Of a stretch of DNA of 64,000 nucleotides, positions 5,638 to 27,769 are shown piece by piece. The position numbers and the translations under genes are program-made. Positions within the stretch are counted from its first letter, which is position 1. Each line of letters starts with the position of its first letter. The DNA lies in IMG/VR virus record IMGVR_UViG_3300027896_005002, positions 62,001 through 126,000 of that record. One strand, given 5' to 3'. The notes beneath the pieces are model-generated. The model was given only the letters and a program-made list of their open reading frames with translations, did no database searches and was not told where the DNA came from.

Positions 5638-5717
5638 TGCCCGTGATTGGAATCGAACCAACATTTTCAGCTTCCTTTACGATTATCTGTTTAGGAAACA
5701 GACTCGGCTACACGGGC
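5638..5717 (-). tRNA. non-canonical tRNA-Arg(CCT), rearranged D region
   Basis: GCCCGTG/CACGGGC, 8-nt linker, TCTGT-TTCCTAA-ACAGA, 23-nt segment starting TAATCGTAA, T-arm GTTGG-TTCGATT-CCAAT. Confidence 0.75.
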
Positions 5718-6656: not shown

Positions 6657-6739
6657 TGGCGCCCGTGATTCGATTCGAACGAACATTTTCAGCTCCAATT
6701 ACGATTAACTGCTTAGAAGGCAGTCTCGGCTACACGGGC
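6657..6739 (-). tRNA. non-canonical tRNA-Arg(TCT), rearranged D region
   Basis: GCCCGTG/CACGGGC-G-CCA, 8-nt linker, ACTGC-CTTCTAA-GCAGT, TAATCGTAA segment, T-arm GTTCG-TTCGAAT-CGAAT. Confidence 0.78.
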
Positions 6740-6824: not shown

Positions 6825-7616
6825 ATGGGTACTTCACAAGGTAACTTCAAAAGAAAACTTACTGGATTTTATGATAATGAAGATCGAAAAAAACAATGGA
6901 GTCAAGCTAGAATTAATACAAACAAAAATTCGGTCATTCTTAATCATAAAAAAACAATTCAGCAATTAACAAAATTAAAAATTAATGTTCAATGGTTTGA
7001 ACTACAATTGCAACAACATCGTATTACCACAATTACTAAAAATTTAAAATTACTTGACATTAAACATCCAAAACTAGCACTTAAATATTTAAAATCTTTA
7101 TTAGAGCCAAAACGATTAAAAGAAATTGCAAAAGAAAAACGAACATCTAAAACATCTGTCACACTTAAAAATCGATTGAGAACTGATATCATACTGAAAA
7201 AGAAATATATTAAAAATCTAACAAAGAGAAATCATCATAAATATCGATCAAAAGGTGAATTACGTCTCAAACATTGGTTACAAAAAACTTATCCTTACTA
7301 TAATTGGAAAAGTATACATTTAACTTATAACAATTCAATTTATGAATTCGATATCTATTCAGAACAATATGACGATTTTTTCATTGAATATAACGGCGCT
7401 TGTCATTATAAACAAATTCATAGTTTAGAAAACTTTCAGCGTATTCAATGTCGAGATGAACAAAAAATACAAATAATGAAAGAACTTAATAAAGAATTTC
7501 TAATCATCAAGGACAGCATGTCCTTTGAAGAACAAACAAAAACTGTGACAAAATTCTTTAATTTAAGTAGTAATCTTCAAATTAAAAAATTGGAGGTGCG
7601 GGGACACTTTATCTGA
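6825..7616 (+). CDS. free-standing DUF559/Vsr-like (EDxHD-type) putative homing endonuclease
   Basis: Basic N-terminal half, then SKGE..YEFDIY..FIEYNGACHY..RDEQK. Confidence 0.72.
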   Translation: MGTSQGNFKRKLTGFYDNEDRKKQWSQARINTNKNSVILNHKKTIQQLTKLKINVQWFELQLQQHRITTITKNLKLLDIKHPKLALKYLKSLLEPKRLKEIAKEKRTSKTSVTLKNRLRTDIILKKKYIKNLTKRNHHKYRSKGELRLKHWLQKTYPYYNWKSIHLTYNNSIYEFDIYSEQYDDFFIEYNGACHYKQIHSLENFQRIQCRDEQKIQIMKELNKEFLIIKDSMSFEEQTKTVTKFFNLSSNLQIKKLEVRGHFI

Positions 7617-8231
7617 TGTTTTCACACCAGTGTGGACTATCTCTTCATCCAATTGGATGATGGGCGCTAATAAAGGATTATTGATTGAGTTTCTCACCTT
7701 TTAGTCTCTGCACTTTCCAACCTACAAAACACTCTTTCAGTTGGCTTAGCTCAGGATTGCCATATCATTTTACTGATTTAGGGTTCCCTGAATTCACCCA
7801 TTTTCTTCATCAATTGTTACCAATTGAGTCAACCATTTTGATTGAACCCCGGTCCAGAAAGTTTTCCATGACAATTACTACATGTTTATTCTATTCTATC
7901 TTGAATACTCACTCCGTAAATAGACAAGCGTTCAATGAGTACTTCGTAAGTGTCACTTCGGTCCCCTTCTCTTTTACGCGTTCGGTTGTCCTATCCGTAT
8001 ATAAACAGTTCAAGTTGCTACGGCTCCGCTTAAACTTCGACCGCCTTTATTTAGGCAGCCATTGCTGGTGCCTTTGCGCACATTGCAGCGAACTGCAATG
8101 CGAACTGAGCACCGAAAACTGAACCAATTTTGTTGGCAGTTGTTGTTTCATTGGATGATTTAAGAGGCCAACCAATGAGTCCTCTACATGCAATTATCAC
8201 TTCACCCAATCTGTCGAAACCTGACACCCCC
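7591..8231 (-). ncRNA. ssrA: tmRNA split by a T-loop intron (exon1 7841-8231, exon2 7591-7604)
   Basis: 5' GGGGGTGTCAGGTTTCGACAG; acceptor GGGGGTG/CACCTCC with G3-U70; resume context ACAACT-GCC; tag ANKIGSVFGAQFALQFAAMCAKAPAMAA (8051-8137); T-arm CGGGG-TTCAAT|T-CCCCG. Confidence 0.92.
7605..7840 (-). mobile_element. ORF-less group I intron (IC3-like, 236 nt)
   Basis: P1 TCAAT/GTTGA with U-G splice-site pair; core motifs GGCAATCCTGAGC, TGCAGAGACT, AGATAGTCC; terminal G at 7605. Confidence 0.9.
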
Positions 8232-19263: not shown

Positions 19264-19344
19264 TAGGAGAGGAGGGATTTGAACCCTCATCTGCCACATA
19301 CCGTTACGATTATCCGCCTTATAAGAGCGGCTCGGTACTCTCCT
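19264..19344 (-). tRNA. non-canonical tRNA-Ile(TAT), rearranged D region
   Basis: AGGAGAG/CTCTCCT, 7-nt linker TACCGAG, CCGCT-CTTATAA-GGCGG, ATAATCGTAACGGTA.., T-arm GAGGG-TTCAAAT-CCCTC. Confidence 0.75.
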
Positions 19345-25298: not shown

Positions 25299-25377
25299 CA
25301 GGAGCGAAGAGACTCGAACTCTCATTTTCAACCAAATTACAAGTATATGGTTTTGGAGACCACACTGTTACGCTCCT
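25299..25377 (-). tRNA. non-canonical tRNA-Trp(CCA), rearranged D region
   Basis: AGGAGCG/CGCTCCT-G, 7-nt linker, GTGGT-CTCCAAA-ACCAT, ATACTTGTAATTTGGTTGAAAAT, T-arm GAGAG-TTCGAGT-CTCTT. Confidence 0.72.
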
Positions 25378-25385
25378 ACAAAATT

Positions 25386-25459
25386 TAGCGGGCAAGAGAA
25401 TCGAACTCTCATTCGTGTGGTTATGAGCCACATCGAGGCACCACGCCTCGCCACCCGCG
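25386..25459 (-). tRNA. initiator-like tRNA-Met(CAT) with 6-bp D-stem
   Basis: CGCGGG start with unpaired 1-72, CGAGGC-GTGGT-GCCTCG, TGTGG-CTCATAA-CCACA. Confidence 0.8.
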
Positions 25460-25465
25460 ATAAAT

Positions 25466-27702: not shown

Positions 27703-27769
27703 ATGTCGTAATTGGATTTTAACCAATGTCTTTAGACAAAATGTGCTGACTTATTGCACCATACGACAT
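27703..27769 (-). pseudogene. tRNA-like remnant with collapsed anticodon arm
   Basis: ATGTCGTA/TACGACAT, D-arm GTGC/GCAC, T-arm ATTGG-TTAAAAT-CCAAT, only ~15 nt between D and T arms. Confidence 0.55.

What the first reader, a model, noticed from the sequence alone, without database searches (positions are those of the whole stretch)
19264..19344. Rearranged tRNA-Ile(UAU): the clearest nested helix
Seen: the linker TACCG pairs perfectly with CGGTA after the TAATCGTAA motif, enclosing the anticodon hairpin. The UAU anticodon is itself rare in bacteria. All three Ile codons in leader 2 are ATA, the codon this tRNA would read.
Basis: partly seen in the sequence, partly recalled or inferred. Interest (0 to 1): 0.7.

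Follow-up and report, generated by a model that had tools for sequence, protein, structure and literature searches.

The report
Phage tRNA with relocated D-arm
The flagged gene is a real tRNA-Ile(UAU)-like gene of a huge freshwater phage, and it belongs to a large, phage-only class of tRNAs (Arg, Ile, Trp) whose D-arm parts lie after the anticodon arm instead of before it; annotation tools miss this class and I found no paper describing it.

Summary
Window 19264-19344 (- strand) is a tRNA-like gene: Rfam tRNA 39.6 bits, not called by ARAGORN. It has a normal acceptor stem, anticodon arm (UAU) and T arm. Only 4 nt stand where the D-arm should be, and 22 extra nt follow the anticodon arm. Three more genes in the window share this layout (Arg-UCU, Arg-CCU, Trp-CCA).

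A matching scan of 185,579 cellular genomes gave 9 loci, all on MAG contigs.

The conserved pairing joins C11-G12-A13 to the UCG inside UAAUCGUAA.

The segment after this helix reads like a D-loop (U-A-R, then GG). Its R covaries with the last base before the T stem like the 15-48 Levitt pair: A/U 112, G/C 9, 1 exception. Identity signals fit the anticodons.

Best reading: a working tRNA-Ile for AUA with a non-circularly permuted D region. Expression and charging are untested. I found no published description.

The parts
19338..19344 (-). Acceptor stem, 5' strand (RNA 1-7, AGGAGAG)
   Evidence: Pairs 7/7 with 19265-19271. The acceptor helix is 99% paired, and all 7 pairs show two-sided changes in relatives.
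19335..19337 (-). U8 A9 C10 connector. U8 and A9 are invariant in the class.
   Evidence: Alignments A3 and A4. In relatives U8 and A9 can pair with the UG that precedes the AAAAU tail (8-54 U.G in 24/24; 9-53 A-U in 23/24). The one exception is this gene, which has G there.
19332..19334 (-). Helix II, 5' strand (C11 G12 A13): the D-stem-like helix that encloses the anticodon arm
   Evidence: Covaries with 19307-19309. Pair 13-39 is GC 9 / AU 8 / CG 7; pair 14-37 is AU 8 / GC 8 / CG 5 / UA 1 in A4. The same helix appears in the Arg type and the short Ile type.
19314..19330 (-). Anticodon arm: 5-bp stem CCGCU/GGCGG, loop CUUAUAA, anticodon UAU at 19321-19323
   Evidence: Rfam alignment. The stem is 100% paired, and all five pairs covary in A4.
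19310..19313 (-). Linker AUAA between the anticodon stem and the helix II 3' strand
   Evidence: Position in alignment A4. Its length varies by subtype (UAA, AUAA, AGAAA).
19307..19309 (-). Helix II, 3' strand (U36 C37 G38, inside the UAAUCGUAA motif)
   Evidence: Compensatory sets across the class: CGA/UCG, CAG/CUG, CCC/GGG, CUC/GAG, CGG/CCG, CAC/GUG, CGU/ACG, ACC/GGU.
19300..19306 (-). D-loop-like segment U A A C G G U (candidates for A14, A15, G18, G19, U20)
   Evidence: UAR...GG is present in 122 of 133 hits of a scan that did not require it. R covaries with the last linker base. The base after GG is isotype-specific: U in 113/120 Ile, A in 105/106 Arg.
19289..19299 (-). Tail AUGUGGCAGAU leading into the T stem. 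The last U (19289) is the candidate nt 48.
   Evidence: nt15/nt48 counts: A/U 112, G/C 9, G/G 1. The tail is longer in this subtype than the YRCAU or UGAAAAU tails of others.
19272..19288 (-). T arm: stem GAGGG/CCCUC, loop UUCAAAU
   Evidence: Rfam alignment; 97% paired in A4.
19264..19271 (-). Acceptor stem 3' strand CUCUCCU plus discriminator A (19264). CCA is not encoded (UUU follows).
   Evidence: The discriminator is A in 120/120 Ile-type members.
19299..19303 (-). It overlaps helix II and the GG.
   Evidence: Perfect complement, and the energy optimum in this gene, but not conserved.
5638..5717 (-). Second gene of the same class, anticodon CCU (Arg)
   Evidence: Rfam 38.5 bits with the same D-arm deletion and insertion; member of A3.
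6660..6739 (-). Third gene of the same class, anticodon UCU (Arg), CCA encoded
   Evidence: Found by pattern and acceptor pairing; member of A3.
25299..25377 (-). Fourth gene of the same class, anticodon CCA (Trp), discriminator G
   Evidence: Rfam 31.2 bits. Its helix II is CAG/UUG, compensatory relative to CGA/UCG.

Best explanation
The gene encodes an elongator tRNA-Ile with anticodon UAU whose D region is permuted in sequence order. After the acceptor stem and U8 A9 C10, a 3-nt strand (CGA) leads straight into a normal anticodon arm. After that arm come the complementary strand (UCG), then a D-loop-like stretch (U-A-A-C-G-G-U), then a tail ending in U, then a normal T arm. The anticodon arm is therefore nested inside the D-stem-like helix, and the D-loop bases lie 3' of it. 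This is a non-circular permutation of the cloverleaf. Inferred: the RNA still folds into a tRNA-like L. The GG would contact the T loop, the A after U-A would pair with the U before the T stem (a 15-48-like pair), and U8 would keep its usual role. It would then be charged by the host IleRS and read AUA, a common codon in this AT-rich phage. It is one of four such genes in the window and one of hundreds in phages. Shown: the sequence layout, the conserved nested helix, the 15-48-like covariation, isotype-consistent identity bases, restriction to phages, and the fact that these four genes supply anticodons absent from the phage's canonical tRNA set. Not shown: transcription, processing, CCA addition, charging, decoding, the 3D fold, and why phages keep this topology. 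The confidence given is for the whole statement; membership of a conserved permuted class is near certain, actual decoding less so.
For: Rfam tRNA hit of 39.6 bits (gathering score 29) spanning model 1-71, with 4 nt in place of the 15-nt D-arm and a 22-nt insertion after the anticodon arm. ARAGORN does not call it. Three more genes in the window share the layout. Helix II covaries: A4 pairs 13-39 GC9/AU8/CG7 and 14-37 AU8/GC8/CG5/UA1; A3 pairs 13-37 GC35/AU4/CG3/GU1. Arg-type members add helix I: 10-48 GC26/AU14/CG3/UA1 and 11-47 CG28/UA7/AU5/UG2. 15-48-like covariation in a scan that fixed neither base: A/U 112, G/C 9, G/G 1. Identity signals: discriminator A in 120/120 Ile-type and G in the Trp-type; A after GG in 105/106 Arg-type (the A20 position that established work names as an ArgRS identity element); U after GG in 113/120 Ile-type. 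Moving the segment 'helix II 3' strand + UAR..GGN' in silico to just after A9 makes ARAGORN/229 with the expected anticodon, against 0/229 native. Repertoire: 28 canonical tRNAs in the 416-kb record lack Trp, Arg-UCU, Arg-CCU and Ile-UAU, exactly what the four permuted genes provide. AUA is 30.8 per thousand codons (35% of Ile) and AGA is 54% of Arg codons. The genes sit within tRNA arrays, here and in Kehishuvirus tikkala, Pseudomonas phage Bitten and Vibrio phage D419.
Against: There is no expression or charging evidence. No RNA run was listed, and the protein-RNA complex job was not folded. This gene deviates from its relatives in the tail: G instead of U opposite A9, and CAGAU instead of AAAAU. 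The ARAGORN test is lenient, since 160/229 controls with the moved segment shuffled were also called. How the 4-bp helix I of the Arg type fits into an L shape is unresolved. An unmodified U34 could misread AUG.
Confidence: 0.7

Rival explanations
1. One reading: UACCG pairs with CGGUA as a 5-bp helix stacked on the anticodon stem, and the UAAUCGUAA motif is a single-stranded internal loop.
For: It is a perfect 5-bp complement and the constrained minimum-energy structure, -26.3 against -23.2 kcal/mol. In the 13 closest relatives positions 10, 11 and 12 can always pair with G, G and the base before GG.
Against: All variation in those pairs is one-sided against invariant partners. The outer pairs U8 and A9 hold in only 7/13 and 11/13 of the closest relatives. 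The helix collapses in the wider family: position 12 pairs in 7/85 short Ile-type, position 9 in 10/88 Arg-rich set. It is mutually exclusive with helix II, which shows true compensatory changes. It would also sequester the invariant GG.
Confidence: 0.12
2. It is a D-armless tRNA of the mitochondrial type with a class II-like variable-arm hairpin (AUCG-UAA-CGGU) formed by the insertion.
For: This gene can draw a 4-bp hairpin inside the insertion, and D-armless tRNAs do function in mitochondria (PMC7609411).
Against: The hairpin is only 72% paired in relatives, with 7-9 of 24 sequences unpaired at three of its four pairs and almost no two-sided change. The window's CCU gene has no such hairpin. 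The conserved GG, intact T loop and 15-48-like covariation differ from mitochondrial D-armless tRNAs (PMC7609411).
Confidence: 0.04
3. The RNA is made but is not a decoder. It could be a tRNA-like decoy or sponge for host tRNA-targeting nucleases or modification enzymes, or another tRNA mimic.
For: Phage tRNAs are known to counter tRNA-cleaving defences (PMC11555353). The class is phage-restricted, and no charging data exist.
Against: Acceptor stems, discriminators and D-loop identity bases track the anticodon's amino acid. Anticodon loops keep U33 and R37. The anticodons match the phage's frequent A-ending codons and fill gaps in an otherwise near-complete tRNA set. A decoy would not need all of this.
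Confidence: 0.12
4. It is a decaying tRNA pseudogene, or the canonical order is restored at the RNA level by cutting and rejoining.
For: ARAGORN rejects it, the Rfam score is low, and GenBank records leave its relatives unannotated.
Against: Hundreds of diverged copies keep every helix through compensatory change, so selection acts on the permuted order itself. The ends are in normal order, and Rfam found no intron or known splice motif in it. Restoring the order would take two cut-and-join events.
Confidence: 0.03

Closest known systems
Canonical bacterial and phage elongator tRNA (Rfam RF00005)
   Same: 7-bp acceptor stem, discriminator, 5-bp/7-nt anticodon arm with U33 and R37, 5-bp T stem with a UUCRANY loop, U8, a GG pair of bases, a 15-48-like covarying pair, and isotype-specific identity bases.
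   Different: The D-stem partner strand and the D-loop-like bases lie 3' of the anticodon arm. This gives a three-way junction in place of the four-way cloverleaf, with the anticodon arm nested in the D-stem-like helix.
D-arm-lacking mitochondrial tRNAs (mammalian mt-tRNA-Ser(AGY), nematode mt-tRNAs; PMC7609411)
   Same: No D hairpin between the acceptor and anticodon stems; only a short connector there.
   Different: Those have lost the D-loop, the G18G19/T-loop contacts and often the T arm, and they are organellar. Here the parts are kept and relocated, the T loop is canonical, and the genes are in phages.
Non-circularly permuted hammerhead ribozymes (Eckert et al. 2023, PMC10085705)
   Same: A natural RNA whose conserved parts occur in a different 5'-3' order that a circular shift cannot produce, presumably with the 3D arrangement kept.
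   Different: A different RNA class. That paper states that no non-circular permutations were known in natural RNAs before it, and it does not report tRNAs.
TYMV tRNA-like structure (non-circular permutation relative to tRNA; PMC11472068)
   Same: A tRNA-shaped RNA whose backbone connectivity differs from that of tRNA.
   Different: It is a 3'-UTR element of a plant RNA virus with a pseudoknotted acceptor arm, not a free-standing tRNA gene with a normal acceptor stem and anticodon.
Circularly permuted tRNA genes of Cyanidioschyzon merolae (cited in PMC10085705)
   Same: The tRNA gene order is rearranged.
   Different: There the 3' half precedes the 5' half, and processing restores a standard tRNA. 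Here the ends are in normal order and an internal segment is displaced.
tRNA-Ile(UAU) of Mycoplasma mobile (PMC3575796)
   Same: A UAU anticodon is used for AUA in place of a lysidine-modified CAU tRNA.
   Different: That tRNA is a canonical cloverleaf in a bacterium with an adapted IleRS. This one is permuted and phage-encoded.

Membership tests
tRNA (Rfam RF00005, canonical cloverleaf) | Score at or above the curated gathering threshold over the full model | tested here: met
   39.6 bits against 29, model 1-71
tRNA (Rfam RF00005, canonical cloverleaf) | 7-bp acceptor stem, 5-bp T stem with a 7-nt UUCRANY loop, 5-bp anticodon stem with a 7-nt loop (U33, R37) | tested here: met
   covariation
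tRNA (Rfam RF00005, canonical cloverleaf) | D hairpin (stem 10-13/22-25 closing the D-loop) between nt 9 and nt 26 | tested here: not met
   The Rfam alignment has 4 nt in place of 15 model positions. ARAGORN makes no call.
tRNA (Rfam RF00005, canonical cloverleaf) | Variable region of 4-5 nt, or a class II hairpin | tested here: not met
   The insertion is 22 nt, and its possible hairpin is not conserved.
tRNA (functional definition) | Transcribed, CCA-tailed, aminoacylated, and used by the ribosome | not testable with these tools
   No RNA run was listed, and the complex job was not folded.
Phage D-region-permuted tRNA class (defined in this report) | 7-8-nt connector starting UA, whose inner 3 nt pair with the 3 nt that precede a U-A-R motif 3' of the anticodon arm | tested here: met
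   C11 G12 A13 pair with U36 C37 G38. The class shows covariation.
Phage D-region-permuted tRNA class (defined in this report) | U-A-R followed within 0-3 nt by GG, with R covarying with the base before the T stem | tested here: met
   This gene has UAA-C-GG and ends its tail in U. Class counts are A/U 112, G/C 9, other 1.
Phage D-region-permuted tRNA class (defined in this report) | UG opposite U8 A9 before an AAAAU-like tail (helix I) | tested here: inconclusive
   This gene has GG-CAGAU, giving an A9.G mismatch. It is the only exception among 24 sequences.
D-armless mitochondrial-type tRNA | Loss of the D-stem together with loss of the conserved G18G19 and T-loop contacts | tested here: not met
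   A D-stem-like helix, the GG and a canonical T loop are all conserved.
Circularly permuted tRNA gene | The 3' half is encoded upstream of the 5' half, so the acceptor strands are internal | tested here: not met
   The acceptor strands are at the two ends and pair 7/7.
Intron-containing tRNA | The insertion is a removable intron (group I, or a bulge-helix-bulge site), and removal leaves a cloverleaf | tested here: not met
   No intron family matches it. Removing the insertion would leave no D-arm. The insertion carries the conserved helix strand and the GG.
tRNA-Ile decoding AUA through a UAU anticodon | Anticodon UAU with Ile identity (A73) and charging by IleRS | tested here: inconclusive
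   The anticodon is UAU and the discriminator is A. A is found in 120/120 Ile-type members. Charging is not testable here.

The most novel reading that the evidence does not exclude
These genes are the first natural non-circularly permuted tRNAs. They form a phage-restricted superfamily (Arg, Ile and Trp isotypes, all charged by class I synthetases) that is aminoacylated and decodes while keeping a tRNA-like L shape through a relocated D-loop. Phages may maintain it because the altered topology escapes host enzymes that recognise or cut canonical tRNAs.
Probability: 0.45. Interest if true: 0.9.

Novelty: new variant of a known kind. Interest (0 to 1): 0.8.

Why it matters
The cloverleaf order of tRNA is among the most conserved layouts in biology. 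The known exceptions either lose arms (mitochondria) or are restored by processing (circularly permuted genes). A widespread class that keeps all the parts in a different order would show that the tRNA fold tolerates a change of backbone topology. It would be a second natural case of non-circular RNA permutation, after the hammerhead ribozyme. There is also a practical side. ARAGORN misses these genes, and they are unannotated in nearly all the GenBank phage records listed here (Vibrio, Pseudomonas, Streptomyces and crAss-like phages; one Streptomyces record calls its copy tRNA-Leu). Phage tRNA repertoires for Arg-AGA/AGG, Ile-AUA/AUC and Trp are therefore undercounted. Because several carriers are cultured, charging, decoding and resistance to host tRNA nucleases can be tested directly. 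The scaffold may also interest people who design orthogonal tRNAs.

Tried and rejected
- **Single-sequence folding** of the four window genes gave non-significant or misleading MFE structures. For this gene the z-score was -1.76 and the anticodon stem was not even recovered. I used it only for relative energies.
- **A UAU-specific exact pattern** returned 21 loci, but only L006 and its duplicate L030 were real homologues. The rest were chance AT-rich matches.
- **The blastn hit of this gene in LR756502** turned out to be a GAU-type member, not UAU.
- **Pairing the linker CC with the invariant GG in the Arg type** was tested and rejected.
- **The variable-arm hairpin** was tested and rejected.
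- **Complex prediction with S. aureus IleRS** was accepted but not folded, so it is no evidence either way.
- **No RNA run was listed** for the locus. Laying the source DNA run only confirmed the assembly: one 22-kb contig with 0 differences.
- **The ARAGORN 'un-permutation' test** has a weak control, since 70% of shuffled-segment controls were also called. I count it as minor support.
- **Ten literature searches** found no description of this class. Subscription-only papers were not searched.

Full report
**What is at the coordinates.** The window is bases 62,001-126,000 of a 416-kb IMG/VR virus record. The record is about 31% GC, estimated 77% complete, and comes from a freshwater metagenome. 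On the - strand, 19344->19264 matches the Rfam tRNA model end to end at 39.6 bits against a gathering score of 29. The alignment has only 4 nt where the 15-position D-arm belongs, and a 22-nt insertion between the anticodon arm and the T arm. ARAGORN finds 22 tRNAs in the window but not this one. The RNA reads:
- acceptor AGGAGAG
- UAC
- CGA
- G
- anticodon arm CCGCU-CUUAUAA-GGCGG
- AUAA
- UCG
- UAACGGU
- AUGUGGCAGAU
- T arm
- acceptor 3' strand
- discriminator A

The source run assembles the locus identically: a 22-kb contig with no differences.

**It is not alone.** Three other genes in the window have the same layout: 5638-5717 (anticodon CCU), 6660-6739 (UCU) and 25299-25377 (CCA), all on the - strand. 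A regular-expression scan of the whole record finds just these four.

**The class is large and phage-specific.**
- An exact-pattern scan of IMG/VR for the motif plus a T arm gave 33 loci, nearly all with the same architecture.
- After parsing and removing duplicates I held 229-231 distinct members.
- Anticodons are UCU, UCG, ACG, CCU and GCG (Arg); GAU, UAU and two CAU with Ile-like features (Ile); and CCA (Trp, this window only).
- A specific Arg-type pattern scanned over one genome for each of 185,579 bacterial and archaeal species gave 9 loci. All are on contigs of metagenome-assembled genomes, and none is in an isolate genome.
- In GenBank phages, members occur in 286 Vibrio phage records (for example D419), in Pseudomonas phages vB_PaeM_Ty and Bitten, in 77 Streptomyces phage records (for example Jay2Jay), in the crAss-like Kehishuvirus tikkala, and in the 642-kb huge phage LR756502.
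- Almost none is annotated. One Streptomyces record calls it tRNA-Leu.
- In D419 and Bitten the tRNA locus-tag numbering skips one number exactly at these sites.

**Secondary structure from covariation.**
- In an ungapped alignment of 44 Arg-type genes (A3), two nested helices enclose the anticodon arm.
  - Helix I pairs U8 A9 N10 N11 with the NNUG that precedes AAAAU. Pair 10-48 is GC 26, AU 14, CG 3, UA 1. Pair 11-47 is CG 28, UA 7, AU 5, UG 2, other 2.
  - Helix II pairs the next three bases with the three bases before a U-A-A motif. Pair 13-37 is GC 35, AU 4, CG 3, GU 1, other 1. Pair 14-36 is AU 21, GC 6, CG 3, UA 2, other 12.
  - Pairing the same 5' bases with the invariant GG instead gives almost no two-sided change, and 22 of 44 sequences are unpaired at one pair.
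- In 24 long Ile-type genes including this one (A4), helix II is 97% paired: 13-39 is GC 9, AU 8, CG 7 and 14-37 is AU 8, GC 8, CG 5, UA 1.
  - A variable-arm hairpin is 72% paired, with 7-9 of 24 unpaired at three of its four pairs.
- In the 85 short (77-78-nt) Ile-type genes, helix II runs through CUC/GAG, CCC/GGG, CGG/CCG, CCG/CGG, CAC/GUG and CGC/GCG.
It may form in a naked transcript. It cannot coexist with helix II, because both use C11 and G12.

**Signals of a tRNA-like core and of identity.** I scanned all held DNA (3.9 Mb) for acceptor, T arm and an anticodon arm placed 5-9 nt after the acceptor stem, with no constraint on the rest. Of 133 hits, 122 had the U-A-R...GG motif.
- The R covaries with the base just before the T stem: A with U 112 times, G with C 9 times, and one exception. 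This is the pattern of the 15-48 Levitt pair of canonical tRNAs (established knowledge).
- It places the strand before U-A-R in the role of D-stem positions 10-13. U-A-R..GG then takes the role of D-loop positions 13-19.
- The base after GG is A in 105/106 Arg-type genes, the position of A20, which established work names as a main ArgRS identity element. It is U in 113/120 Ile-type genes.
- The discriminator is A in 120/120 Ile-type genes and G in the Trp-type gene. CCA is encoded in 58/106 Arg-type genes.

**Interpretation.** Relative to the cloverleaf, the block 'D-stem strand + D-loop' lies after the anticodon arm instead of before it. The strand that remains after U8 A9 runs directly into the anticodon stem, so it takes the geometric place of positions 22-26. 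A circular shift cannot produce this order, so it is a non-circular permutation. A tandem duplication of the D-to-anticodon region followed by two deletions could produce it (my inference).

Moving that block in silico to just after A9 turns 227 of 229 members into sequences that ARAGORN calls with the expected anticodon, against 0 of 229 in native order. The control with the moved block shuffled is still called in 160 of 229, so this is minor support. How the extra 4-bp helix I of the Arg type is accommodated in three dimensions is open.

**Function.**
- ARAGORN finds 28 canonical tRNAs in the record. They cover most amino acids but lack Trp, Arg-UCU, Arg-CCU, Ile-UAU and Asn. The four permuted genes supply the first four of these.
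- In ORFs of at least 200 aa, AUA is 30.8 per thousand codons (35% of Ile) and AGA is 20.8 per thousand (54% of Arg).
- The most likely role is therefore an ordinary decoding tRNA for AUA, charged by the host IleRS.
- Nothing here shows transcription, processing, charging or decoding. No RNA run was listed, and the protein-RNA prediction was not run by the tool.
- Why phages keep this topology is unknown. Escape from host tRNA-targeting nucleases is a reasonable hypothesis, given that phage tRNAs are known to counter such systems (PMC11555353). I have no evidence for it.
- All three isotypes are substrates of class I synthetases. By my calculation this has about a 10% probability by chance.

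**Comparison with the literature.**
- The 2020 review of non-canonical tRNAs (PMC7609411) covers Sec, Pyl, allo- and mitochondrial armless tRNAs. It does not mention phages or this layout.
- Eckert et al. 2023 (PMC10085705) state that no non-circular permutations were known in natural RNAs before their hammerhead variants, and they do not report tRNAs.
- The ARTEMIS paper (PMC11472068) lists the TYMV tRNA-like structure as a non-circularly permuted tRNA mimic.
- A 2023 survey of structured RNAs in IMG/VR mentions unspecified tRNA-like candidates (PMC10690425).
- Ten full-text searches found no description of this class. The library lacks most subscription journals, so prior description cannot be excluded.

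**Verdict.** The gene belongs to a large, phage-restricted, apparently undescribed class of tRNAs with a permuted D region.

Noticed in passing
window 27703-27768 (- strand): A 66-nt tRNA-like sequence (Rfam tRNA 45.2 bits) with normal acceptor, D and T arms. The anticodon arm is reduced to about 6 nt where the model has 13 positions. ARAGORN does not call it.
   Followed up: partly
window 7613-8224 (- strand): A tmRNA match (7839-8224, 80 bits) directly abuts and overlaps by 16 nt a full-length group I intron match (7613-7854, 91 bits). The tmRNA gene may be interrupted or followed by an intron.
   Followed up: no
window 25385-25460 (- strand): ARAGORN calls this tRNA-Met(CAU), but in the local Rfam search it scores best against the tRNA-Sec model (31.5 bits, below that family's gathering score of 47). 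Its D-stem looks unusually long.
   Followed up: no
L388:3891-3972 (+) and L344:1730-1807 (-): Two permuted-class genes with anticodon CAU but Ile-like features (discriminator A, GGU). L388 has almost the same scaffold as the window's UAU gene. They may be lysidine-dependent tRNA-Ile2 versions, and a possible origin of the UAU type.
   Followed up: no
Alignment A3 columns 49 and 53 (e.g. L010:196-275, L023:5524-5603); window 19291-19294: In the tail NNUG-AAAAU, a change of the U opposite A9 to G goes together with a change of the third A to G (GG-AGGAU, GG-AAGAU, and GG-CAGAU in the window's gene). This linked change is unexplained.
   Followed up: no
GenBank OZ195672 (Vibrio phage D419) and PV037721 (Pseudomonas phage Bitten); loci L034 and L035: tRNA locus-tag numbers skip exactly where the permuted genes lie (TRNA_0010 in D419, tRNA0007 in Bitten). 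An annotation pipeline may have predicted something there that was later dropped.
   Followed up: partly
whole record G000 (416 kb): Total length of ORFs of at least 150 aa rises from 333 kb (standard code) to 428 kb if TGA is read as sense, and to 359 kb if TAG is. Some rise is expected by chance, and I did not test for recoding.
   Followed up: no
G000:C1:312712-316228 (outside the window): A second small tRNA cluster (Cys x2, Ser-GCU, Phe) with low Rfam scores (35.6-47.9 bits) and odd lengths (68-94 nt).
   Followed up: no
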